Translations under genes and position numbers: made by a program | Part shown: positions 24,062 to 54,379 of the stretch, piece by piece | Numbering within the stretch: position 1 is the stretch's first letter | Layout: each line of letters begins with the position of its first letter | Assembly (NCBI GenBank): GCA_037379345.1 | Contig: CM074524.1 | Coordinates: 27,896,750 to 27,960,749, forward strand | Direction: 5' to 3' | DNA: 64,000 bases | Source: Perna viridis | Lineage: Eukaryota | The notes under the pieces: generated by a model | What the model was told of the DNA's origin: nothing | Databases searched by the model: none | What the model saw: the letters and a program-made list of their open reading frames with translations, nothing else

Positions 24062-24220
24062 NNNNNNNNNNNNNNNNNNNNNNNNNNNNNNNNNNNNNNN
24101 NNNNNNNNNNNNNNNNNNNNNNNNNNNNNNNNNNNNNNNNNNNNNNNNNNNNNNNNNNNNNNNNNNNNNNNNNNNNNNNNNNNNNNNNNNNNNNNNNNNN
24201 NNNNNNNNNNNNNNNNNNNN
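24062..24220. other. Assembly gap (159 N)
   Basis: Run of N. Confidence 1.
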
Positions 24221-39066: not shown

Positions 39067-42000
39067 TCACACAATACATCTACCTCTGTAGTAATAAATA
39101 TCATCTAAAGCAATATCTCCTAAATCTGTACTTCCCATGGCTGCCTCTAATACGATCTAAAAATACAAAAGGAATCTTGAACAAATTTGTACAAACCGAT
39201 GTGTCAGCATTTCTTTTGGAATTGTTTACAAATTAGTCTTTATACAATAACATCTTTAATGGTCAAATGTAATGGCCAACTGTTACAACGTACAATATAC
39301 TTAATCATTGTTAAACATTAGTTACATTGTTTTTTCTTCAAATTCGTAGTTCCGATTAAATAGCCTTGTTAAGTATTTTGTTTTCCAATCAAGTTTTTAT
39401 TACTACAAACATGAACTGCAATGTTCCCATTCAATTATGAATAAAGCTATCGTTAAAAATCATAGACACATATTTCAAGAATGCTTATGTGCAATATACT
39501 TTTTAACAAACTTGGACGATGCGAAACGACAGAAAAGGTTGAAAAGGGCGACTTTTTTGTGAAACCCATATTAGTCAGTATAAAACATACCATGAAATGT
39601 TAGAAAACGTAGACGAATTCATTACCCATCAGTCATACAGATCTACCATGAAGCATTAGAACCGGTGCACTAGGTCCATGCTCCCAGTTTTTATTAGAGT
39701 CCGAGTTGTTCATTTACTTATGTAACTTTGTAAATTTTATTTTGGTTATTTTATGTTCTTTGTTGTGGTTGTGTGTGTCTGTTTTCCATATCTGGTCTTT
39801 GTCCCTGGATTATATTTTTTTATTTCCGCTAGAATAATTGTTCCCTTGATTACTCTTTTAAATCATAGAACCCATTCTTGTCATTTATTACGGAACCTAC
39901 CACGAAACGTTAGAAAAAGTAGAAATTGGACACTGGTATCGTGGAAAACCCACACTAATCAGTCATATGGCTCACCTGGAAATTTTGTCCTACTGTAAAC
40001 TCATCATTGAAGACATTCCATTGGTTAGCTTGTTCTCCTTCCAAAGATTTAAATTCTTTGGTCATATCTCCTACTCTGACGTTTACAGAGAGTTTATTGA
40101 CGTCCCGGCCGGACATGTAATAGTAAAATCTAAGGCAATATGTTCCAGCGTTCAGTGAGGGACTGACTAATCTGGATTTTTGGTTATGATGAAGATGAGA
40201 CTCTGCTAAAGCATAGTAACCTATAAAAACACACAATATTAGTTCAGAAAGTTGACCAGCAACAAGTTGTTCTTAACACTATGTACTCTCATAAAGATGA
40301 ATTAATTGATCATTAACAGCATATAATGACGATGTTCAGGATATACTGTTGTCTATTCTTGATTAAATGAAATTACATAGGCATATATCTAAACCATAGA
40401 GAAAGAGATATGACGTTTTAACAGGCAATTCGATATGTATTGATACAAAGTTTATATCCTCTTAATGTCCAGTCAAATACCTTCAACTGCAATTTGTTCC
40501 TGATATCCTAGTTGTTTTTTTCCTGTTATATTCCATTTGTATTTACTACCCGTTAAGGTTGTATTTAGTAAAAAAGCAAATCAACAATTTGCAAGTATTT
40601 TAAAACATTTTGATAAATAGCCTAATCTGTATATGTTTCAAAAAAACCAATGTGGTATGAATGTCTATCAAGTTTTTTTGATTATTTCTTCTGTTGTTAT
40701 ATCCTTAAGAGATGAAGAGATTTAAAAATAATGAAGAGTAAGATAAAACAAACAAATATTAATTATACCTACCTATGCCGTTACTGTAGTCAAAATTTGG
40801 TCCTGTGCCATTAGATTTTGTAGATCCTGTGTTTCTAACCATATCAAAATCGTTCTCACCATCTTGAGACCATTGACAGAAATCGTTTTCAAAGTCGCAT
40901 TTGACAGCACCTGTATAATACAAAAAAAATCAAAAAGATGGACAACTGTTAATAAGCTACATAACTAAGCTTCAAATTAAAGCATTTCTTTTTTAAAGTT
41001 AAACAGTAGAAAAAAGTCTGATTGTAGTTCACATCGGTTTCAAGCTCCAATCGAACTAATGTTTATAAGTTTTCAGTCTTTATAGTTTACAACATGAATG
41101 AGAAAAACGTCTTTTTTTGTTCCGCAATAGACATTTAACAAAACAATAAACTCTTGTTCTTTGAATGGTCCAACTATCAACTAATCATTTACACTTACCA
41201 GAAAGTAAATCTTGTTTATGGATGACATCACCAACTGTAAAGAGACAAAAAAAATCATGTTGTTACAATTCATTAATTTAATGAAAGAAACATTTTTGTT
41301 CCTCATACGTCAAAGTTACTCATATAATATTGATATCCTTAGACAGGATTTCGAACAAACATACGCCGTGACGTCGAACAAAAATACAAAATATCATGTG
41401 ACCGGAAATTGCATTAGTATATTACCTCTTCCGCATCCGTAACCATCTCTGATGTTTTCAATGTCGAAGTCACTGAGAGATACAGACCATGGGAAAACTT
41501 CGCCTTCATATTTGGCCTTCATTGTTGGTTTGGATGGGTCCTTGGCGTAGGCATATGGGAAGAAGAATGTGACGGATTTGTAGTCAAATGGAGATTTGAA
41601 GAAGGTGGTGTCATTCACCTTGGCGAAGAAGGTTTGGTATTCTGAAAAGTAAAATAAAAATAATTAAACATGTGAATATCCTTTGTGTGAAATAGTAGTT
41701 AATTCCCGATTTATCACATCAAATTTGGTATTGAAGACGCTAAAACATGAATGAAAATAACCAATACTTTCCACCAGACAGATGCATCCAAGGCACATAC
41801 ATGGTTCCGGTTAGAATTAGCAAACTTGAATGTTGCTCCAGTTAACAAAGAATTTGGATATATTTGGACTCAGAAATAAGTGTTTCTCCTTAAAACTTAC
41901 GTTTTGGAATGTTGCTGTAGTCGACGACAACGAAGTCATCTCTGTTTGGTCTACGGAAAGCATTGTAAGCTCCCAGGGTGTACATCAACAACTGCATGAT

Positions 42001-43802
42001 GTCAGCTTTAGCCATGTTGTCGGTAACTCTGACGACCTGCTTTCCTGTGATACGTCCGGGCTTAGCCACTCTTCCGAAAGGTTCTCTGCAATTATACATT
42101 TAACAAATTCTAAAATCGGTAATTACATGTAAATAAACAGATTGCCAGTAAAATACACTACGAAAATATATAGTAACTATCCGTCAGCTTTAGTTTATTA
42201 TATAAAATACATGTTACTATTATGAGCATACAGAAGTAATATATAAAAGATGCATAGTTTACTCAATAGAACTGACTACAATATTATTACACTGTGTTTG
42301 CACGATTCAAAGGATTTGAAAATTGTTTGGTGTTGGTAATACGGTTTAGGCAAGGTTTCCTTAGTAATATGGTTTTGGCAAGGTTCCTTAGTAATACGGT
42401 TTAGGCAAGGTTTCCTTAGTAATACGGTTTTGGCAAGGTTCCTTAGTAATACGGTTTAGGCAAGGTTTCCTTAGTATTTTTGTGAGACGGGTATTACCGG
42501 AGTTCGTTATAGAGTTTCCATTATACTTTGTTATAACTTACGAAGATTCAGTTGAGAATTCTACATAGTCAGCCTCGTTTTTACGTGGAGTGAAGGTGAT
42601 ACACTCCCGTCCGCCGCTGTAAGTATCAAACTGAATCTCCTGGATAGAGGCAAGAACTCTTTCTCTTGTGAATCCAGCTGAAAGTGAAATTAACATTTTA
42701 TTCATTCTTGAACTGCTAGGTTAAGTAAATAAAAGCTGAAAAAAAGTTTTTAATTACATAAAAAAAACAAAAACAAATCCAAACATCAACAAAAAACAAC
42801 CAAAAAACAAAAAATAAAAAAAATAAAACATAAAAATAAAACAGAGGAAAAAGTACGGGCTGACTGTATTGTGCACTTTGGCATTGCTGAGTTGAAAAAA
42901 ATATGACAATGCCCTTATGAAACCCAGATAGTACTTTCTTAAGTCATTATGCAAATATTAGTGCATGCATCTACCGAAGCTAACCAACTCAATTTACCTA
43001 GGGTATTGACATGTCTGCATAACTCAGTTAAGTAAAAAATGTTATGTTGATTAAACCGACTGAGAAAAAAAATTAAAAAGCTCAATTAATGCGCTGATTT
43101 ACGAAACTAATAACTGAACAAAATTTGTACTTACTGACTGATGGGGAGAATGTGATGGGAATTCTCCCGAAAGGCCAGAGTAGTACACTGTCATCTGCTG
43201 CGCGCTTCTGTAAATTGAAGAAGAGAATGATATATTAAAGCCATTGTTTTGAAAGAGAAGAGGAAAATAACACATTTACATTCATTCACTGTATCAGGCC
43301 TCCCAAAGCATGGAGATTACTTCATATAACAAAGGTCTAATTTACAACCAATTAAGTTTAAAAAACGATTCTAAACTGTTTATAGTTCTCAGCTTTATAC
43401 ATTTTCAGTAATGCATTAACTTTTTGCTAGCCAAGATCATTTGAAAAAAAACTTCCTCAACATCCAAAAAAAAAAAACGATTTTGAATCAAGATATTTCA
43501 CAGATTATATGTATTGCTTAAGGTGTACTTTTTATGCCCAGTTTGTATGACGGTACACTTGCAATCTATTCATTAACTGTTTCCGTGATAAATATGCATG
43601 TCTATAAAACTGCTAACAGGAAGATATCATTTCACTACCGCTTCCGCTATCTATTTAACTGCTTAAGTGCAATGATAACTTTAAACCTGAGTAAATGCAT
43701 CAAACACAATAAAAATCAAGTATATTGTCCTACCTGAACGCTTGCGCAGACAGCACAGTGGACAACTACGGTCAGAACAGCGGCTAGCCTTAGACAATTC
43801 AT
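39067..43802 (-). CDS. Gene A: secreted astacin-like (M12A) pseudoprotease + MAM domain, 9 coding exons, 395 aa
   Basis: Exons (minus strand): 43802-43734, 43207-43135, 42677-42542, 42085-41901, 41641-41426, 41234-41199, 40910-40773, 40220-39976, 39156-39067. All introns are GT-AG, phases 0,1,2,1,1,1,1,0 join in frame, 1188 nt ending in TGA. Signal peptide MNCLRLAAVLTVVVHCAVCA; astacin landmarks LWPFGRIP, CITFTPR, RRPNRDDFV, FDYKS, LSDFDIENIRDGYGC; MAM landmarks CDFENDFCQW, TGPNFDY, RLVSP, YCLRFYYYM, GDIALDDI. Confidence 0.92.
39661..39858 (+). mobile_element. PLE 3' tail copy in the last intron of gene A, antisense to the gene
   Basis: Same tail family. Confidence 0.8.
42336..42476. repeat. 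27/28-bp minisatellite, 5 copies, in intron 3 of gene A
   Basis: Unit gtaatacggtttaggcaaggtttcctta alternating with a shorter variant. Confidence 0.92.
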
Positions 43803-43864
43803 TTTTGGCAAATGGCTCAGTAGCACGGTTTACAGATGGTTTTAAAGCTCTCTTATCACGTGGT
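43800..43864 (-). promoter_or_regulatory. Putative core promoter of gene A (ACCACGTG E-box, TATA-like TTTAAAA, Inr-like GAGCCATTTGCCAAA before ATG)
   Basis: CACGTG at 43857-43862, an AT box 10 nt further downstream, and a 15-mer identical to the one before the gene B ATG; spacing matches gene B. Confidence 0.55.
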
Positions 43865-44417
43865 GTAAGACTTAAATTTGAACTACTATTTGACAATTCA
43901 CATTTATCAAAGAAGGTCTCTTATCGGGGGCTGACCCGAAATTTACGTTCGGTCTTTAGGACAACCCACCGTACTTCCATTAAAGGGCATAGTATTTTAC
44001 CTTACTAAATACATGTACTTGTATACCTTTCTTGATAGACTCCCCTTTTTTCCTTCTTCTGAAAGTTTGTGAAGTCATAGTTAGAAAACAAAATAATTAC
44101 GTTTACATTTGAAACAAGTAAAATTAGGCATGTTCTAATGCACATGTTTTTTTTTTAAATTGTAGCATTCAAATTGACTGTTTCTCACTAAACACAGCAT
44201 GCAATGTGTGATGGTCGTTGTATTTTTAATTTGTACTGTTTAGGCTCATGTCGACAGGCAGCTTTTAATCAACAAATAACGTTTAGATTGAATGTTTCAA
44301 AATTCCAATAGCAAAGTCTTATGGATACTAAAATACCAATCTTTGTAAAATGTCGGTATGTGTTTCAAGTAATTACCTTTCATCAACAACAATAGAATGC
44401 TTAAATGATTAAGATTC

Positions 44418-44934
44418 GTTTGTTTGTTTGTTGGGGTTTAACGTCCGAGCAGCAATATTTCAGCTATATTCAGACGATGAACATGAAATTGAGGATAAAA
44501 TGAACATGAAAATATGATGAAATGAAAAAGGGATCGGACACAAGGACAATGGGGTCGACAAATTTTGATTGCCACTGGAAATAGGGAGAGGTGGGTAGAG
44601 TCGGGCAATTTAGCCTCCTGTGGCGGAGCCCTATGGTTCCTACTCCGGGAGAATACCACAGTAGGGTTCTTTAACGTGCGAGGAACATGGCATCTTTCCC
44701 AACACGGTGCACCACTATGGTTTGCGGTCAGGTTTTCCGTATTATAGCCTGACAACCCCAGCATGTAACAAGCCAGAGGTACCCCATTCCACCACCTGGG
44801 GCACACATCCCAGTTACTCTGTGGGCAGAGCGCCCTAGCCCCCGGCTAAGGTTCTGAGCACTATTTAGTCGCCTTTTACGACAAGCTTGGCGCTGCTGCA
44901 GGCCTATTCTTTTAACACCCGGACCTGTACGGTG
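44418..44934 (-). mobile_element. SINE-like non-autonomous retroposon, copy 2, ~600 bp upstream of gene A
   Basis: Perfect 11-bp TSD gattaagattc (44407-44417 / 44935-44945); (aaac)n tail. Confidence 0.9.
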
Positions 44935-47799
44935 GATTAAGATTCAAAAACGAATTGCAAACAAGTTCTCCAAACCAAAAAAAAAAAAAAAAAAAAAATC
45001 GGAATAGGAAGCTAAAGTCAGCATTAATTAATTGCGTTGTGTCTGCATCGCTATTCTATGCAACAGACGTTGTTTTAAGGTTTCATTGGTCATATCCTTA
45101 AGTAAAATCATCAATTACTGCAACAATAAAACAGAGAAATACGCAGAAACTAACATCAATCAAAACGAAAATCGTTGAGAGAATGAAGTTAAAAGCAGCT
45201 AGTATCTGATTTTCTATAAGGCACTGAGTTGCTCAAGTATAATTTTATAAATGAAAATTCGGCAGCCGCATAACTTTGAATTTAATTTGTAGTTAAAGAA
45301 TAGTAATGTGTATGTTTTGCATCAACGACATTGCGAAAGAATTTGCGGATACAAAATATCGCTATCTTTTCATTTTAATTGCATTGCTTCGTTTCTATAA
45401 ATAAGTACTGTTAGGTTACAAAATAAAAAATCAAACAACAACAAAATACGCCTTGAAACTTAGTTAATGTTTGATTTTGTAGTGAAATATAAGCGAGCTT
45501 TCATTTTTTCGTGCTCCGTTCGAAACGAAATCTCGCGATGTAATCTGCTCCACGGTACTAGAAACTATAACTAGACCGTATACCGTGTGGCGAATTGTTT
45601 GGGCGGGTGTAAAGTTTAGCGATTATAACCAAAATTTTGGCGTTTTTCTTTTTTTTCGGATCCTTGGTGGTGCATGCGAAAAAAAAATAAGCCCAGAGTC
45701 AACATATCGCAGAATTGATTTTGACGTTGTTGTAATACGACAAAATTAACATCCCACAAAGTTTACCCGGTATTCGGTACTCAGTGCATGGTAGGTGAAT
45801 TTGTTTTGTTGAATTGTCTTTCAGTATTAGTTTTATAACATCGACTATTGCATTTTTAGGTACTATACAGTTGTCTTAATCGAAAACTCTTTGTCTATAT
45901 AATTTTGTATAAGATATTTTAGAATTGTAATTATATTAAGGTACGAATTGGGGTGTGTGAAACCGATAACTGCTTTCTAGACAATCGTCCGATGAACTAA
46001 ATACCTGCGAAAGTTAGATTTAGGGTTACTCTGTTTCAGACGGTAATTTCATATTTAGCCAAGGCGAGAGATATAGGCGTAGCAACCTAGAAATTAAATT
46101 AATAAGAAAATAAGTGGGGGGTAATCAGTTAAAGGGACATATCTTTACGTCAACGAGATCACGCGACGACGTCGGAATTTAACGTAATTTCAATACACAC
46201 GGAACAATTATCTTTGAATGTTATATAAGGCATAAATGGACAGAGCGGTTATACATTGGCCTAAACAAATAAATGTTGAAATATTTCCGATAATGATTCA
46301 AAATATTTGATCAGGTCTTCAATTGGAATACACAGAAAATATCTTACTTGAAGGATTCGGATGAGTAAAATGCTTAATTGGACTGGAATCATTCTGGTAG
46401 TTTTTAATCGAACTTGACCTTTAGTTACTAGCTGGTCACTAGGGCGTCTCATGTAGGGCGTCGACTGCCAGATACAATTGTTATAATATAAAAAGAGCCT
46501 CAAAAGTGTAGGCGTACGGATGCTTAAGGTTTCTTTCAAATTTTTGATTTCAGATAGAAATTAATTTTTGAACAAACTTATCTAATCACACGTTTATCTT
46601 TGTATTGTACCCCACATTCAAAACAAATTTATTTATATTACTAAAGTGAATCAAAACAAACTACCCAAAATGATCAGAAATTAGTAGTACAAGCGACCTT
46701 TTTAGGGTTTGTGGTTAACTGACATTCAAGAGTATATCAAACAAAAACATGAAATTTTCTGCGCCGTAAATGTAGTACTATAAGGTGCTGAGTGTCTTTG
46801 TTCACATGCGCCTTTGTTTGTAAACATTGATAATATCGGTGAAAAGGACTAAGTTTCTGACGTATTTTGTGGTTTTGTCTTGTGCTATTTATTCACGATT
46901 TTCGAAAGGTTCAATACGTGCATTCGTCCAAAGTATAGGGGACATAGTTCACTTTAGGACAACTCATTTTGTTTGTAAACAATCGAACTAAATGCATATA
47001 CATGTACAAGTATTGCTAACGTTCTTTCATGTACACGTACTCATTTGGTGTGTACTGTGGTTATTAGAACAATGTCTGAAATAGTTCTTATATAATAGTA
47101 TGGTTAAAGACGAAAAACTTTTAGACAGATTTGATGAGGCAGCAACATTATAAGAGTGAATCGGTGCTGCTGACATACTACATGTATCACATAATTAAAT
47201 ATACCATCCGGATACTCCCCAGGCATTCCATCCATCATATCATCCTTCTGAGAGTATTAGCTGACTCGCGATATAAAATGACTTGAACATTTCATAATTG
47301 CTACCTTTAGGCGTGGATATGATGAAATGCTCATTATTGAACAAGGTGCATTTGCAATGTGATCGTCTAGCAATTTGTAAAAGACGCTGCATCATTTTCC
47401 AGCGTCTGGCTTTTTAAGGAAACTTAGGACCTCACCGAGTCGTGGTTCTTATTCATTTTATTGTTGTTCAGTTAAAAAAGAATGGCGCTGTTTGATTTGA
47501 CAATACATTCAACATCATATAAATAATAAATAAATCTTTTCTTCTTTTGATCTTATAAAATAAAACAGAAACCTGGAAACAAGAGTAATGAAATAAATGA
47601 AAGTTTTAAATGAGTTGCCTTGGTTCCCTTGATTATTCTTTCGTTTATGATATTCAAAGGTTGATACAATAGATACATGTAGTTTTTTTACAATGTTTTG
47701 AATATATTTCACGTTAATACAACAGAGTTGATATTTTTGGACCATAATCTTGGCCTAATATCTGTACACCTTTTACTGTTTCATTCATTGACCCCCTCC

Positions 47800-48234
47800 T
47801 AACATTGAAGCAATATTCTTCTTCAGTCAAGTTGTCTTTTATTTCGGCTTCTATAACATTGAAGCTGTATTCTTGTTCAGTCAAGTTGTCTTTTATTTCG
47901 GCTTATATAACATTCAAGTTATATTCTTGTTCAGTCCAGTTGTTTTTTATTTCGGCTTATATAACATTGAAGCTATATTCTTGTTCAGACCAGTTGTCTT
48001 TTATTTTGGCTTCTATAACACTGAAGCTATATTCTTGTTCAGTCCAGTTGTCTTTTATTTCGGCTTCTATAACACTGAAGCTATATTCTTGTTCAGTGCA
48101 GTTGTCTTTTATTTCGGCTTCTATAACATTGAAGCTATATTCTTGTTCAGTCCAGTTGTCTTTCCTTTCGGCTTCTATGACATTGAAGCTATATTCTTGT
48201 TCAATCCAGTTGTCTTCTATTTCGTCTTCTATAA
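47800..48234. repeat. 54-bp minisatellite, 8 copies, ~380 bp upstream of the gene B ATG
   Basis: Unit taacattgaagctatattcttgttcagtccagttgtcttttatttcggcttcta; gives 18-aa periodicity in the ORF track. Confidence 0.95.
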
Positions 48235-48554
48235 AATTATTGGCTCATGCACGAATTTTGTTACCTGCACCTACATGCAAGGTTTTATAGTAGACACAAC
48301 ACCAACATGTACATGTATTAAAGGTTCCAACTTTTCAAGTGCAATATGAGAGTTTAAAAAGTGCTGTCATGACCTAAGACTAAGCTTTTGATTGACAGAT
48401 CGCAAAGTCCGACCCATATTTTCGTTCTCATTCAATTCCATCGTAGTTCAGGGCAAAGAGGACGCCTCTCAGGTCAAGCTAGATAAGAATACTATGTGAT
48501 AAATGACTATAAGGTTCATTATCTTGGGTTTGGATTGAAATTTATAGGGTTGTG

Positions 48555-48618
48555 ACCACGTGGTGTCTTTACAATAAATTCTCAGGTAGACTCTTGTTCG
48601 GAGCCATTTGCCAAAATG
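48555..48618 (+). promoter_or_regulatory. Putative core promoter of gene B (ACCACGTG E-box, TATA-like AATAAAT, GAGCCATTTGCCAAA before ATG)
   Basis: CACGTG at 48557-48562, AATAAAT at 48573, conserved 15-mer at 48601-48615. Confidence 0.55.
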
Positions 48619-48843
48619 AAGTCGGTCGTATTTGTTGTTGCCTTGGCTATCGTTTCCGTACAGGTAAGCCGGGTTTTATACTTTTTTTTTAATTTATCAA
48701 TACTGTGCGTAAATGTTTTAAAATATAGCGCAATGCATATTAGGAAATGCACTTGAGGTTAATGGACATTCTGAGATTCCTTTCAAATGTTGTTTACTCT
48801 TGAATTAATTAAGCAGATTTCTAAACGAAAAGAGAACTCGAAA

Positions 48844-48885
<42 letters not shown>

Positions 48886-51800
48886 GAAAAAAAAATTATA
48901 GAATCACTTTTTTTCAAAAGTGTATTTTACCTTATTGTTTTTATAAAGGAATTTGATAAAAGTCGGATTTTCATCTTATAAAACGAGAAAGAAAATAATT
49001 CTTGTATATCGTAGATTGGTTGTAACATTCATATACATGTATAATTACTTTTGATATTGATTTCAAAAGCAACAACTTTGAAGCAGTAAACTTTACCCAT
49101 ATGCAACTAGAATGTATATGTATCAATGACATTGTCACTTCCGACCCAAGGGGCCATTTACTGGCTAAAGTTAGGTGTCAGGTCAACGTTTTATTAAATA
49201 GCAATGTTAATTCTATTGTAGAGTGCTGTTAGATTGTGGCCCAATGGAATTGTTCCAGTGGCATTCGACGACAGCGTCGGTGAGTATCTAAAAATTATTC
49301 CTACCCATTGCATTTTGCTAAGTATTACATCAGATCAAAGTCCGGTTTCATACTTCACATCCCTAGCTTTTTCTCCAATCTTCACATCCCTAGCTTTTTC
49401 TCCAATCTTCACATCCCTAGCCTTTTCTCCATACTTCACATCCCTAGCTTTTTCTCCAATCTTCACATCCCTAGCTTTTTCTCCATACTTCACATCCCTA
49501 GCTTTTTCTCCATATTTCCTAGCTTTTTCTCCATCCTTCACATCCCTAGCTTTTTCTCCAATCTTCACGCTCAAGCGATCTAATTCGTCGAAATTTGAAT
49601 TGAAGAAGGTTACATGTAAAACTAAAACTGAGACTTTGAATGAAATCGGGTCCTATTATCTATTAACAAAATAATTGCACATTTACCAATCAGAAAACTG
49701 TAACTTAGGTTTAAAACTGTGAAACGATTGTAACATTGGTGATGCTTTGTAGACACTTCCTTACCTAGGACACGAGCATACTCAGCATTTTGTGGAAGAT
49801 AAATTTTGAAGTAAAATGCAAAAAGAGTCATTGCATTTACATGTATCGAGCCTTCAAATTAAGAAAATGGCAACATGTTGTCGTTTATCGGAAAGGGAAA
49901 AAGAATTTTCCTAGAGCCAACGTAGATTTTTTAAACAAAATGCATTGTGTAAGGTAATATATGCCAACATCTCCGGAGTATACTGAAGTACGCATTCTTA
50001 TTGTTTTCTTTGCCTATGTAAAGCATGTTGAACAACTTCTAATGGTGTCTGATTTCAGACGGATTCGCTAAAGAAAAGCTGATGGCATCAATGAACGAGA
50101 TACAGATTAGTACCGATAACTGCATCCAGTTTGTACCAAGAGAGGCTCAGGCCGACTTCGTAGAATTCTCATCAATTAACGGGTTAGTTGATTATTTATA
50201 CGTTATTGAATGATGCTTCGTACTGTATTTAAAAAAAACAACATTTGTTTTTCATTTCAACAAAGCCGAAGTGCTCATTCGTAGGCCTTTTCGCTATGAA
50301 AACTTCCCTCAAAATGGAAGTTGCCACGAGCTAACTACCGCACATAGTAAGATAGACATTGCCAGATTTTCCTTCATTTGAGGCTTTCCTATTGAAGCTT
50401 TAATACCAATAATTTCATTTTTACATTTTTTTTTACATTTCGTTTTGTTTTTCTACAGTTTGACCGAAATCCCAGTTCCAGGGGTTACCAATGGAAAACA
50501 GTTTGTTAAAATCGCAGACAACCTGGAAAAAGCCGATATGATGCAGTTGTTGGCGTACACTCTTGGTATGTACAACACCTTCAGGAGACCCGACAGAGAC
50601 AGCTTTGTTAACATCATGTACGATAACATTAAGGATGGTACGTATATAATCCAGGACAGGGTCCCGGGGACAGCATATTGAATTACGTAACAGTTGGTTG
50701 TACTGTATTCAAGATCAAACCTCTATTATACGTTGGTGTACATGGGGAATCTTGAAGCAGGTTATTTAAATTATAGTTTCTATCAGCAGCAAAATTGCAC
50801 AGATAACTGAATTGCTCTTTGCCTATGCCTATTCATGTCAGCTTCATTTCTACAACAAATTCTCAATGGTAATTCAATAACTTTCAATGATCGAAAATGT
50901 AAAGATTTTTTTCCTTATGTCAAGGTCTTGGTAACTATGTATGGATGTATGTTGATAATACTAATTCACTTACTTTTTACAGAGTACAAACAATATTTCG
51001 CCATTTCTAACGATACCACCTTCATCCAGTCAAGATTTGACTTCAACTCAATCACATTTTTCTACCCATATGCCTACGCCAAGGATCCATCAAAGCCAAG
51101 TATGACAGCTAAATATGAAGGTGATGCAATCCCATGGAAAGTTTCCCTCTCCGTCAACGATGTCCACAATCTTAAACGTGGCTACGGATGCGGAGGAGGT
51201 ATGTCTTATCGTCACAAACAAACGCCTGTCTTAAATTTTCCCGTGTTTAAACGCAGTTTTCCATAAAAAAAATAATATGGCAGATCATAAAAACTATTTT
51301 TATGACACAATTTAAGATTAGAAGATCATCGATGAAGTACAATATCCATCTTAATATTTAGTTTTGAGATATTAGAAAATCAAAATTTATTGACAAGTGT
51401 TGATATCATTATGTAATAATAATACAAAGTAATAAAAACTTATTGTTGACTTTTTACAGACACCACAAACAGAATTGATCTTCTTAAAGGTGAGTAAAAT
51501 ACAATAATCACCAATTAAAAATGTTAGCTATTATCGCCCTTTAGATAATTGGATTTAACGCGGCTGCTGTTGTACGTACTCGTTTTTTCGTTCATTTTAA
51601 AAATTTGATCACACTCACAGTGCTAGTTCAAACTTTCTCACTTGACGCTGCCAGATTATGAAATTTGTCTTGGTAATTGGAACTATCAATTGATATCAGC
51701 ATTGTACCAGTTTTAACCGTTTTAAATACAAAATAATAAAAATACATAATTTTTTTTTAAATAAACAAAAGGAGCATATCTTATAGGAACAGATGTATAT

Positions 51801-53507
51801 CGAATCCGAAAATTAAAAACAAAATTATGCCATTTGAAAAAAAAACTAGCTGTACAGTACCGATATTTTACGTATTTCGAATATCATTCATAAAGAAGGA
51901 AAGTAAAAGTGACTACTTCTATTGCCTTTATTGTTGTCTGCAGAAATATAGCTTTACATTATTATTTTAATCAATATAGGTCTCCAATACTGTAACTTTG
52001 AAAATGGTATGTGCAACTACAGAAATGATCCAACAGCTGATTTTGAATTTACAAGAACAAGAGGACCAACACCAACTGCTATGACAGGACCAAATGCTGA
52101 TTATAGCAGTGGTATTGGTATGTACTTATAAATATCATTCATATAAATGACAACCAAGGACTCCTTCTACTCAATTAGGGTAGTTGGAAGAGACATTCAT
52201 GACAAATTTCAATATATACATTAAACATTAAAGAACTCATTCAAAATACTTAAAATATCATATTTGTGAATTAAAAATACATTTGCAACAAATTCTCATA
52301 ATTCCGAAACATGAATATGTGTTGTAGAAAAACCATTTCAGTTTCTTCTTTTTTTTTTTTTGTATCTCATCTTATTTTTAGTTTTTATTTACGATATCCA
52401 GCGATTCTTCACGCGTACCTTTTCTTCCACGATTTGCATCGTATTTTATCTGTTGTTTTTTTCTATAATGTGTTGTGTCGTATTCAATAAAAAAGAAAAA
52501 TACCATATTTTGCTTCTAGGATATTTCCTATTAGCTGAAGCCAGAACAAATAACATGGAAGTTGCCAGATTATTGAGTTCACCAATCGCTGCTGGTGAAT
52601 ATTGTATCAGATTCTATTATCATATGTACGGTGATAATGTACACAAACTCCGTATAATGAGCAGAGTTGGCGGACAAGACACCCTTCTAGAAGAACTGTC
52701 TGGTAACCAAGGCAACCAGTGGAACAGATATACAAACACCTTTACATTCGGCTCAACAGTTGATGTAAGTACTAAAATATACATGTACTAGTATTATAAA
52801 ACATTTAAAATAGATTAAAACGAACTGATTTTATTTCGTTCAATTATGGTCAATTTTTAAAGGGTTTAAAATATAAAGTAATTAATAGAAAGCGACTAAG
52901 TATAAAAAGAACATGGTAGAATATATCTACTTCCGATTTATTCGTGTTTTGCTAGAGTCTGTTTCGAATTTCCACAGTCGTCATTTGAATCATATTTAAA
53001 GTATATTGTTTTACTTGAGTTGGAGATCATTGATTCTTACAATGAGAATAAACTTGAAAATTCGGGTGTTGAAATACATAAACAATGCATTCTTTTTTGA
53101 CAAGAAATGGGTATGGCAAGACATAACGAATACGTGCCAGCTGAAAGATGTTAATTCGACTGAGGTCATTTTGGATTCTAATTCATATGATTACTTCGGT
53201 TAACAGGCATTTAATGCTGAACCTATTGCCTTGCAACATGAAATAAAGAAAAACAAACTCAAACTCAAAAGTAAAAATTGGTTAAAGCCAAAATACATTG
53301 AAGGCACAATCTAAAATAAAAGAAAAACAAATTTAGTTTATTGAATTCCAAACGTTACGGCTGTTCGTTTATCGGGATATTCATTGATATATATACATTT
53401 TGGTCTTTATTTTACAGTTGGTTATAGAAGCTATCATTAACAGAGTTGACACAGGTGATATTGCCATTGATGATATTTACATGTACAATGGAAAATGCAT
53501 AGTTTAA
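48616..53507 (+). CDS. Gene B: secreted astacin-like (M12A) pseudoprotease + MAM domain, 9 coding exons, 375 aa; paralogue of gene A
   Basis: Exons: 48616-48663, 49222-49279, 50059-50182, 50459-50637, 50983-51198, 51460-51489, 51980-52117, 52520-52764, 53418-53507. All introns GT-AG with the same phases as gene A; exons 5, 7, 8 and 9 have the same lengths as in gene A (216, 138, 245, 90). Signal peptide MKSVVFVVALAIVSVQS, then AVRLWPNGIVP, CIQFVPR, RRPDRDSFV, GYGC; MAM CNFENGMC, TGPNADY, YCIRFYYHMYG, GDIAIDDI. Confidence 0.92.
49351..49570. repeat. 27-bp minisatellite, ~8 copies, in intron 2 of gene B
   Basis: Unit cttcacatccctagctttttctccaat. Confidence 0.95.
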
Positions 53508-53672
53508 ACTTTTATAGATGTCGCTTTCATCAACTTCCTGTGGGTAATGCATTCATGATCAACAGGACGCTTTGTGTGTGAATATTGACGTTACCATGGT
53601 TATATTGTTTTACATTTATTTGTACAAATCTTGGGGAATATCTGTTGTTGTGTACGAATAGGGTTTTTTTAC

Positions 53673-53678
53673 AATAAA
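53673..53678 (+). terminator. Probable polyadenylation signal of gene B
   Basis: AATAAA ~165 nt after the stop, followed by a GT/T-rich tract (tttgttttgtgtttt, ~53696-53711). Confidence 0.55.
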
Positions 53679-54379
53679 TTAATGATGTATAAATATTTGT
53701 TTTGTGTTTTTCTCACTTTTAAGCATAAAAAGCACGTTAGCGCTCTGTAGTTGTACTCTTCTTTATCAGTCGATTTCCGGTCGTACAGAAAAAGTTAAAA
53801 CTGGCAGTCACTACAGATCTACTCTTCTCTGTCAATCAAACAAACACTAAGTACAGAGTGACAATTGGTTGGCTAAGAATCAGAATAATGCGTCTGTGTG
53901 ACATGCCTATATCTGCTGGCTGTTGCTTATTAGCCTTCACATTTTTACTTCCGAACCAGGCGAGTGCAGCAATGTAGAGTTTGTACAAATCGTTACTTTG
54001 ATTTATTCAATTTGAAATATATAATGATGAAACTGTGTTTATTTATTTGATTAATTCTATGTTACATGTAAGTGAATACAAAGGCGCAAATAGTAGTATA
54101 CTTGTATTCAATTTTCTTAAAAAAAGCGAAAAGAGTGAGACGTGCTACAAATCTACCAAGAACCTTTTCCCCTATTTATATAAAAAACCTTATTAAGCTT
54201 GCTCAAATACCCACGCGTCCCCATGTTGGATACTCAAGTAAATTTGTTCGTAAAAGAAATACATGTAGAAGGACCCCGATTAAAAAAGTAATTAAAGTGG
54301 TTTTTTTTCAGAATTTAAACCTTTTTCTTCTAACTAAATTCTGTTACTCAGAATGGTAGTTTCAAACTCCAGACTGTGA

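What the first reader, a model, noticed from the sequence alone, without database searches (positions are those of the whole stretch)
39067..53507. Head-to-head pair of intact, secreted astacin-MAM proteins with a completely rebuilt, non-catalytic active site
Seen: both spliced ORFs are intact. The astacin motif HExxHxxGxxHExxRxDR reads QLLMYTLGAYNAFRRPNR in gene A (from 41994) and QLLAYTLGMYNTFRRPDR in gene B (from 50544). The three Zn ligands are Q/Y/N, the catalytic Glu is L, and the family Glu after the third His is A/T. Established: these residues are required for metzincin catalysis. Inference: these are pseudoproteases, not pseudogenes. The same Q-L-x-x-Y...N substitutions occur in both paralogues, so catalysis was lost before the duplication and the new residues have been kept. 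Possible roles are substrate or ligand binder, decoy for protease inhibitors, or structural component of mucus, shell or adhesive. Automatic annotation would probably mislabel them as meprin or astacin proteases. I do not know whether this subfamily has been described.
Basis: partly seen in the sequence, partly recalled or inferred. Interest (0 to 1): 0.85.

Follow-up and report, generated by a model that had tools for sequence, protein, structure and literature searches.

The report
Paired dead astacin-MAM genes, known family
Two intact, divergently oriented bivalve genes encode secreted astacin-MAM proteins that have lost every residue needed for zinc proteolysis; they are real and under strong selection, but they belong to the "meprin A alpha-like" family that a 2025 paper described in scallops as a cadmium-binding digestive-gland protein.

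Summary
Gene A (minus strand, 43802-39067, 395 aa) and gene B (plus strand, 48616-53507, 375 aa) each have 9 exons with GT..AG borders, matching intron phases and intact reading frames. Spliced contigs from a public run support all 8 introns of B. In both genes the astacin zinc motif reads QLLxYTLGxYN. Alignment to crystal-structure sequences maps this as H92Q, E93L, H96Y, H102N and E103A/T. The Met-turn, one disulfide and the prosegment are also gone.

Relatives in other species show dN/dS of about 0.03-0.10 at saturated synonymous sites. All 10 related fragments from public assemblies carry the same Q/Y/N residues. The genome holds only these two copies.

The subfamily is not new. Zheng et al. 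2025 (PMC12357810) purified scallop myMEP1A (392 aa, 44 kDa), which has Q122/Y126/N132 at a "Zn-missing site". They showed midgut-gland expression and Cd binding, and found the histidine loss conserved in six other bivalves.

New here: two old paralogue lineages, the wider extent of the dismantling, measured selection, and a partly substituted MAM metal site 1. The scan holds one related note on this window and none on other DNA.

Verdict: new member of a known kind, modest interest.

The parts
39067..43802 (-). Gene A, complete coding span (9 exons, 395 aa precursor, mature protein about 42 kDa, pI 5.3)
   Evidence: Homology model with GT..AG at all 8 introns and the same phases as B; single stop at the end; composition. 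No RNA evidence was obtained for A.
43734..43802 (-). A exon 1: start codon plus a signal-peptide-like 23 residues, ending ...SVQ before a GT donor
43135..43207 (-). A exon 2: KR-AADDSVLLWPFGRIPITF, the astacin mature N-terminus; no prosegment
42542..42677 (-). A exon 3: astacin N-terminal subdomain, holding the Cys equivalent to astacin C42
41901..42085 (-). A exon 4: rebuilt active-site helix; Pfam Astacin positions 58-115
41941..41994 (-). A motif QLLMYTLGAYNAFRRPNR in place of HExxHxxGxxHExxRxDR (Q124, L125, Y128, N134, A135)
41426..41641 (-). A exon 5: astacin C-terminal subdomain; Met-turn replaced by SVTFF (41576-41562); holds the Cys equivalent to C198
41199..41234 (-). A exon 6: 36-nt linker micro-exon
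   Evidence: the homologous 30-nt exon of B is supported by RNA contigs
40773..40910 (-). A exon 7: start of the MAM domain (CDFE..., predicted metal sites 1 and 2)
39976..40220 (-). A exon 8: MAM core
39067..39156 (-). A exon 9: end of the MAM domain (...GDIALDDIYYYRGRCIV) plus stop codon
48616..53507 (+). Gene B, complete coding span (9 exons, 375 aa precursor, mature protein about 40.5 kDa, pI 4.9)
48616..48663 (+). B exon 1: start codon plus a 16-residue signal-peptide-like segment
49222..49279 (+). B exon 2: SAVRLWPNGIVPVAF, mature N-terminus; no prosegment
50059..50182 (+). B exon 3
50459..50637 (+). B exon 4: rebuilt active-site helix; motif QLLAYTLGMYNTFRRPDR at 50544-50597
50983..51198 (+). 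B exon 5: Met-turn replaced by SITFF (51048-51062)
51460..51489 (+). B exon 6: 30-nt linker micro-exon, seen only through the spliced contigs
51980..52117 (+). B exon 7: start of the MAM domain
52520..52764 (+). B exon 8: MAM core
53418..53507 (+). B exon 9: end of the MAM domain plus stop; the contig runs on to at least 53633 (3' UTR)
43803..48615 (.). 4.8-kb spacer between the two start codons; holds a 54-bp x 8 tandem array (47800-48238) and no further family exon

Best explanation
[quoted passage not shown] These are soluble proteins of about 40-42 kDa with a signal-peptide-like N-terminus (secretion is inferred, not shown), built from an astacin-fold domain and one MAM domain.

The astacin domain is a pseudopeptidase. 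The three zinc histidines are Q/Y/N. The general-base Glu is Leu. The family-specific Glu is Ala or Thr. In the Met-turn, Met/His/Tyr are Thr/Phe/Phe. The C64-C84 disulfide is absent, and so is the latency prosegment. The protein therefore cannot work as a zinc endopeptidase. This rests on established metzincin chemistry plus the residue mapping shown here.

It must act by binding. The only experimental lead is the scallop relative, which was purified from midgut gland on Cd-affinity resin and by CdS precipitation, and which competes for Cd2+ as a recombinant protein. The authors assign the binding to the two acidic Ca2+-type sites of the MAM domain, by homology modelling only.

I infer that A and B are digestive-gland divalent-metal (Ca2+/Cd2+) binding proteins. 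The dead astacin domain is kept as a conserved scaffold or second binding surface.

Shown: the genes are intact, B is spliced, both belong to the family, the catalytic residues are lost, and purifying selection is strong.
Inferred: secretion, tissue of expression, metal binding, and which sites bind.
For: - Gene models and splicing.
- Pfam Astacin and MAM matches exon by exon.
- Residue equivalence to astacin (1AST, 3LQ0) and meprin alpha (7UAB). MAM matches in PDB.
- Family membership: scallop myMEP1A has Q122/Y126/N132 against Q124/Y128/N134 in A, 392 against 395 aa, the same FFxPYAYAKDPSKP block and the same ...GDIA[IL]DD...C[IL]V end (compared by eye). The histidine loss is conserved in Argopecten, Magallana, Mytilus, Ostrea, Pecten and Ylistrum.
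- All 10 related fragments carry M-Q-[LI]-[LI]-x-Y-x-L-G-x-[YF]-N-x-F-R-R-P-D-R-D; a canonical astacin in the same alignment keeps HExxH.
- Selection: A against L038 omega 0.04; A against L036 0.10; B against L040 0.03; B against L039 dN 0.107 with saturated synonymous sites. A against B: dN 0.46, dS about 1.9.
- Only two copies in the 723-Mb genome. An active astacin-MAM paralogue with the same exon layout lies on contig 2.
- Six Cys in each mature protein, fitting three disulfides; no hydrophobic segment beyond the signal peptide.
- MAM site 2 residues (E243, T271, Y283 and D381 equivalents) are kept in A and B.
Against: - Metal binding has been shown only for the scallop protein, and the site assignment there is by homology model, not mutagenesis.
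- Site 1 side-chain ligands are not kept here: the D255 equivalent is N in A and A in B, and the D258 equivalent is E in B.
- Cd affinity capture can enrich any acidic protein, and pI here is 4.9-5.3.
- Three true RNA-seq runs of this species gave almost no reads on B, so tissue and expression level are unknown. A was not tested with reads.
- The very high conservation of the rebuilt pocket is not explained by a MAM-only mechanism.
- Whole-protein searches and structure prediction of the spliced models were not run.
Confidence: 0.8

Rival explanations
1. The proteins are non-catalytic, but their selected function is protein binding rather than metal handling. Examples are a decoy or sink for astacin inhibitors, a regulator or partner of the active astacin-MAM paralogues, or a lectin-like or structural component of the digestive secretion. 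Binding would go through the remodelled cleft and the MAM domain.
For: - The rebuilt cleft residues (Q, Y, N, FRRPDRD) and the exon-5 block are the most conserved parts of the protein. Exon 5 has dN 0.26 against 0.53 for the MAM domain.
- Known metallo-pseudopeptidases act through protein-protein contacts (PMC11266112).
- MAM domains are adhesion and oligomerisation modules.
- MAM site 1 is not conserved in A and B.
Against: No partner is known. The only biochemical data for the family are on Cd binding (PMC12357810). Nothing here tests an interaction.
Confidence: 0.3
2. The Q/Y/N pocket, with neighbouring polar residues, forms a new metal or small-ligand site, so the 'Zn-missing site' itself contributes to Cd2+/Ca2+ binding or to an unorthodox catalysis.
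For: Q, Y and N are invariant across all family sequences at saturated synonymous divergence. All three carry O or N donor atoms.
Against: - The general base is Leu and the Met-turn Tyr is Phe, so hydrolysis by the metzincin route is excluded.
- Amide and phenol donors bind Zn2+ or Cd2+ weakly compared with His or Cys.
- Invariance is equally explained by packing and hydrogen bonds that fill the zinc void.
- No structure was computed.
Confidence: 0.1
3. A and B are decaying pseudogenes of astacin-MAM proteases, or artefacts of exon modelling.
For: The catalytic motif is destroyed. There is little or no read support in three RNA-seq runs.
Against: - The ORFs of 395 and 375 aa are intact across 9 exons each, with 16 of 16 canonical introns.
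- Spliced contigs cover all 8 B introns.
- Omega is far below 1 against several species.
- A purified protein of the same family exists in scallop.
Confidence: 0.02

Closest known systems
[quoted passage not shown] 2025, PMC12357810)
   Same: - Same architecture: signal peptide, no prosegment, astacin-like domain, short linker, one MAM domain.
- Nearly the same length (392 against 395 and 375 aa).
- Q/Y/N at the three His positions (Q122/Y126/N132 against Q124/Y128/N134 in A).
- Same FFxPYAYAKDPSKP block and same C-terminal GDIA[IL]DD...C[IL]V.
- MAM site 2 residues are kept.
   Different: - Different species.
- There are two diverged paralogues (50% identical) in divergent orientation.
- MAM site 1 carries N (A) or A and E (B) where the scallop protein has Asp ligands.
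- Tissue expression and Cd binding are not tested here.
- The paper mentions a C-terminal transmembrane domain, which A and B do not have.
Vertebrate meprin alpha/beta (M12A; PDB 7UAB/7UAE)
   Same: An astacin catalytic-domain fold followed directly by a MAM domain. The Ca2+-type acidic sites of MAM are present, and the C42-C198-type cysteines are kept.
   Different: - Meprins are active zinc endopeptidases with HExxHxxGxxHE, SxMHY, a prosegment, and further TRAF/MATH, EGF and (in beta) transmembrane parts.
- A and B lack all of these.
- Exon-level matches to meprin are weak (E about 0.005).
Active astacin-MAM paralogue of the same genome (G000 contig 2, about 48.244-48.246 Mb; L009/L017)
   Same: Same exon layout across the astacin domain (profile positions 55-117 and 116-188). 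It has a ...SFAKDKSKPT... block and a following MAM exon.
   Different: It keeps HEMLHVLGFWHE, SIMHY and both extra cysteines. It is only about 35% identical to A in exon 5, and the tree shows a very long branch between the two.
ADAM pseudopeptidases (M12B: ADAM2, 18, 22, 23 and others; review PMC11266112)
   Same: Metzincin-fold pseudopeptidases whose zinc motif begins Q-L-L (ADAM2 QLLSLSMGITYD, ADAM18 QLLGLNVGLTYD). They are extracellular and act by binding.
   Different: They belong to a different subfamily and have a different architecture. They usually keep the Met-turn methionine, whereas here it is Thr. That review lists no M12A astacin pseudopeptidase.

Membership tests
Astacin family, MEROPS M12A (as an active peptidase) | Zinc-binding consensus HExxHxxGxxHExxRxDR | tested here: not met
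   A has QLLMYTLGAYNAFRRPNR and B has QLLAYTLGMYNTFRRPDR, aligned column for column to astacin HELMHAIGFYHEHTRMDR. Only G, R and (D/N)R survive.
Astacin family, MEROPS M12A (as an active peptidase) | Met-turn SxMHY with the zinc-ligand Tyr | tested here: not met
   SVTFF (A) and SITFF (B) align to SLMHY of meprin alpha and SVMLY of 8A28.
Astacin family, MEROPS M12A (as an active peptidase) | Prosegment (zymogen latency) between the signal peptide and the mature N-terminus | tested here: not met
   The signal-like exon 1 splices straight onto KR-AADDSVLLWPFG (A) or SAVRLWPNG (B).
Astacin fold / Pfam PF01400 (homology, not activity) | Significant match to the Astacin profile over the catalytic domain | tested here: met
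   A exons 4 and 5 score 24.5 and 24.2 bits against a cut-off of 22.5. B exon 4 scores 28.4 bits and B exon 5 scores 19.3 bits. The matches cover profile positions 58-188. PDB astacin and meprin hits have E 8e-4 to 5e-3.
Astacin fold / Pfam PF01400 (homology, not activity) | Conserved disulfides C42-C198 and C64-C84 | tested here: inconclusive
   Cysteines at the C42 and C198 positions are present (A C73 and C224; B C57 and C206). Both cysteines of the second pair are absent. Pairing itself cannot be tested.
MAM domain, Pfam PF00629 | Profile match plus four conserved cysteines | tested here: met
   49 bits in each gene against a cut-off of 26.4. PDB MAM hits to enteropeptidase and MDGA1. Four Cys in each MAM domain.
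Bivalve myMEP1A-type dead astacin-MAM subfamily (PMC12357810) | Q, Y and N at the three zinc-ligand positions | tested here: met
   Q124/Y128/N134 in A and Q106/Y110/N116 in B, against Q122/Y126/N132 in myMEP1A. The same holds in 10 fragments from other assemblies.
Bivalve myMEP1A-type dead astacin-MAM subfamily (PMC12357810) | Architecture and size: signal peptide, astacin-like domain, one MAM domain, about 390 aa, about 44 kDa | tested here: met
   395 and 375 aa; mature 42.3 and 40.5 kDa.
Bivalve myMEP1A-type dead astacin-MAM subfamily (PMC12357810) | Conserved MAM metal sites 1 and 2 | tested here: inconclusive
   Site 2 side chains (E, T, D) are kept in both genes. In site 1, the D255 equivalent is N in A and A in B, and the D258 equivalent is E in B. 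The comparison to the published sequence was made by eye.
Bivalve myMEP1A-type dead astacin-MAM subfamily (PMC12357810) | Midgut/digestive-gland-specific expression and Cd2+ binding | not testable with these tools
   The tissues of the runs are coded. Only the presence of a spliced B transcript form in run X12 could be shown.

The most novel reading that the evidence does not exclude
The invariant Q-Y-N pocket together with the T-F-F turn may be a newly evolved ligand or metal-binding site rather than filler for the lost zinc. The two paralogue lineages, which differ in MAM site 1 (N/D in A; A/E in B), would then have split functions or work as a heteromer. If so, the published account that Cd binds at the MAM Ca sites would be incomplete, and this would be the first mechanistically defined astacin (M12A) pseudopeptidase.
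Probability: 0.15. Interest if true: 0.55.

Novelty: new member of a known kind. Interest (0 to 1): 0.3.

Why it matters
Annotation pipelines label these proteins as meprin or astacin proteases, so protease counts and degradome inferences for bivalves are inflated. Recording them as pseudopeptidases corrects that.

The family is the only candidate high-molecular-weight cadmium-binding protein identified in scallop digestive gland, which bears on seafood safety and biomonitoring. Knowing that another bivalve carries two long-diverged, strongly constrained paralogues with different predicted metal site 1 residues gives a natural comparison for testing which sites actually bind metal.

It also adds an M12A example to the metallo-pseudopeptidases. 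A 2024 review of that field lists only M12B (ADAM) cases within M12.

Tried and rejected
- **Full-length relatives.** The all-length HMMER search of 1.84 billion representatives with A exon 4 returned only single-exon fragments of the family plus canonical astacins. The libraries evidently lack bivalve RefSeq proteins. The search for homologous proteins was not used, because exon-sized queries cannot reach proteins of about 390 aa under its length rule.
- **Joined models.** The spliced models were joined only inside local scripts, for the frame check, the A-B alignment, dN/dS and composition. 
- **Contigs of relatives.** Contigs carrying related fragments are short pieces from metagenomes or single runs. 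Species could not be assigned. L038 has its exons in scrambled order and was used only for codon comparison.
- **RNA evidence.** The three definite RNA-seq runs (X21-X23) gave 1-2 reads each on gene B. Support comes only from contigs of X12, whose RNA status is the tool's guess.
- **Third copy.** None was found in the window or the genome.
- **Nearby intronless astacin-like ORFs.** Those at contig 14, 28.12-28.17 Mb, were checked as possible relatives. They keep HELLHALGFMHE, lack MAM and are unrelated to this family.
- **Other screens.** Rfam found nothing in the window. The two other large ORFs have no Pfam match.
- **Organism.** It was not identified. A mussel is only a guess, based on the Asp-to-Asn change that the paper reports for Mytilus.
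Full report
**Observation.** The window is a 32% GC stretch of a 723-Mb eukaryotic genome (contig 14). Six-frame reading shows two sets of homologous open segments, one on the minus strand between about 43.8 and 39.07 kb and one on the plus strand between 48.6 and 53.5 kb. Exon by exon they match Pfam Astacin (PF01400) and MAM (PF00629).

**Gene models.**
- Gene B: contigs of public run X12 laid on 48400-53700 skip eight intervals, each bounded by GT..AG. Joining the nine exons in a local script gives an intact 375-codon frame. One exon, a 30-nt linker at 51460-51489, is visible only through these contigs.
- Gene A: the same nine-exon layout was recovered by homology. This includes a 36-nt linker exon (41234-41199) and a first exon encoding a signal-peptide-like 23 residues (43802-43734). 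All introns are GT..AG, all phases equal those of B, and the frame is intact at 395 codons.
- The genes diverge from each other, with start codons 4.8 kb apart.
- X12 is only guessed to be RNA. It shares a study with definite RNA-seq runs, and the genome holds no processed copy, so the spliced contigs are best read as mRNA.
- Three definite RNA-seq runs gave almost no reads. That points to tissue-restricted or low expression.

**Method limit.** The spliced models were assembled only inside local scripts. Every database, family and PDB search was made exon by exon, by reference. Whole-protein searches and structure or complex prediction of the joined models were left out.

**What has been lost.** phmmer alignments of A exon 4 to astacin (1AST, 3LQ0) put Q, L, Y, N and A opposite H92, E93, H96, H102 and E103. 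They also show a gap where the C84 region lies. Exon 5 aligns to meprin alpha (7UAB) and to 8A28 with SVTFF opposite SLMHY/SVMLY. The full list of losses:
- the three zinc histidines, the general-base Glu and the family Glu;
- the Met-turn Met, its neighbouring His, and the zinc-ligand Tyr;
- both cysteines of the second disulfide;
- the prosegment, since exon 1 splices straight onto the mature N-terminus (AADDSVLLWPFG in A).

What remains is the astacin scaffold with the C42/C198-type cysteines, a conserved NDT sequon, and a complete MAM domain with four cysteines. There is no hydrophobic segment beyond the signal peptide.

**Is it under selection?** A and B are 50.4% identical, with dN 0.46 against a saturated dS of about 1.9. 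Ten exon-sized relatives were found in public assemblies. All carry M-Q-[LI]-[LI]-x-Y-x-L-G-x-[YF]-N-x-F-R-R-P-D-R-D, while a canonical astacin in the same alignment keeps HExxH. Codon comparisons with the contigs that encode these relatives give:
- A against L038: omega 0.04;
- A against L036: omega 0.10;
- B against L040: omega 0.03;
- B against L039: dN 0.107 with synonymous sites saturated.

A small tree groups the A-type and B-type sequences together. Two further lineages (L042, L037) lie outside them, and a very long branch leads to the nearest active paralogue. L037 holds homologues of exons 2-5 and 7-9 of an otherwise similar gene within 3.1 kb. Taken together, catalysis was lost long before the A/B duplication, the duplication itself predates the split from the species that carry the A-type and B-type fragments, and both copies are maintained. 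The genome has exactly two copies. An active astacin-MAM gene with the same exon layout sits on contig 2.

**What is known.** A full-text search found Zheng et al. 2025 (PMC12357810).
- From scallop midgut gland they isolated a 44-kDa Cd-binding protein by Cd-affinity chromatography and CdS precipitation.
- They showed midgut-gland-specific mRNA and found that the recombinant protein competes for Cd2+.
- On a meprin alpha (7UAE) model, the three zinc histidines are Q122, Y126 and N132.

The sequence printed in their supplement matches A and B block for block by eye: the motif, FFxPYAYAKDPSKP, the linker ...DLLSG, and the C-terminal GDIAIDD...C.V. The ligand numbering differs from A by two residues. 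A and B are therefore members of this published family. A 2023 astacin review (PMC9848320) and a 2024 review of metallo-pseudopeptidases (PMC11266112) do not mention it. The latter lists ADAM2 and ADAM18 with a convergent Q-L-L start of the motif.

**How it most likely works.** Proteolysis by the metzincin mechanism is excluded by the residues present (established chemistry). By analogy with myMEP1A, the proteins are most likely secreted, acidic (pI 4.9-5.3) divalent-metal-binding proteins of the digestive gland, using the Ca2+-type sites of the MAM domain. There are three caveats.
- The site assignment in the paper is a homology model.
- In A and B the site 2 side chains are kept, but site 1 is altered (N in A; A and E in B). 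L037 and the scallop protein keep both aspartates.
- The best-conserved part of the protein is the dead astacin half, not the MAM domain: exon 5 has dN 0.26 against 0.53 for MAM. This agrees with scan note s1-780868. The remodelled cleft probably has a role of its own, either structural or as a binding surface.

**Verdict.** The subfamily has already been described, with a protein-level function proposed. What this window adds is a pair of ancient, divergently arranged paralogues, the full extent of the dismantling, quantitative evidence of constraint, and variation in predicted metal site 1. It is a new member of a known kind, of modest interest.

Noticed in passing
G000 contig 14, 28122000-28175500 (L033 1287-2474 minus; L034 1502-2704 plus; L035): About 165-215 kb from the window lie two intronless ORFs of 395 and 400 aa, plus a broken third copy. 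They have an intact HELLHALGFMHE astacin motif, a weak Pfam Astacin match (33-39 bits) and a Cys-rich C-terminal half, with no MAM domain. This is a local cluster of single-exon astacin-like genes unrelated to the dead family.
   Followed up: partly
G000 contig 2, about 48244008-48246500 (L009, L017): This is an active astacin-MAM gene (HEMLHVLGFWHE, SIMHY) with the same exon layout as A and B. It is the closest catalytically competent relative in the genome. Its MAM exon contains a short internal tandem repeat (GVSGSGPLADYTT, x4).
   Followed up: partly
window 47800-48238 and 49353-49568: There is a 54-bp x 8 tandem array in the spacer just upstream of gene B, and a 27-bp x 8 array inside B intron 2. 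Both create long spurious ORFs in the ORF listing.
   Followed up: no
window 42336-42476: A 28/55-bp tandem array lies in A intron 3.
   Followed up: no
L038 (JGI metagenome contig, 1060 bp): This contig carries A-type exons in scrambled order and orientation: exon 5, then exon 4 on the same strand, then exon 3 reversed. It is probably a chimeric assembly of a bivalve sequence within a metagenome.
   Followed up: no
L037 (Logan contig, 3154 bp): Homologues of exons 2-5 and 7-9 of a third-lineage dead astacin-MAM gene (QLIMYLLGFFN) are packed into 3.1 kb. Introns in that species are therefore much shorter than the 0.26-0.8 kb seen here.
   Followed up: partly
window 24062-24220: A run of 159 N (assembly gap or masked stretch); left untouched.
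   Followed up: no
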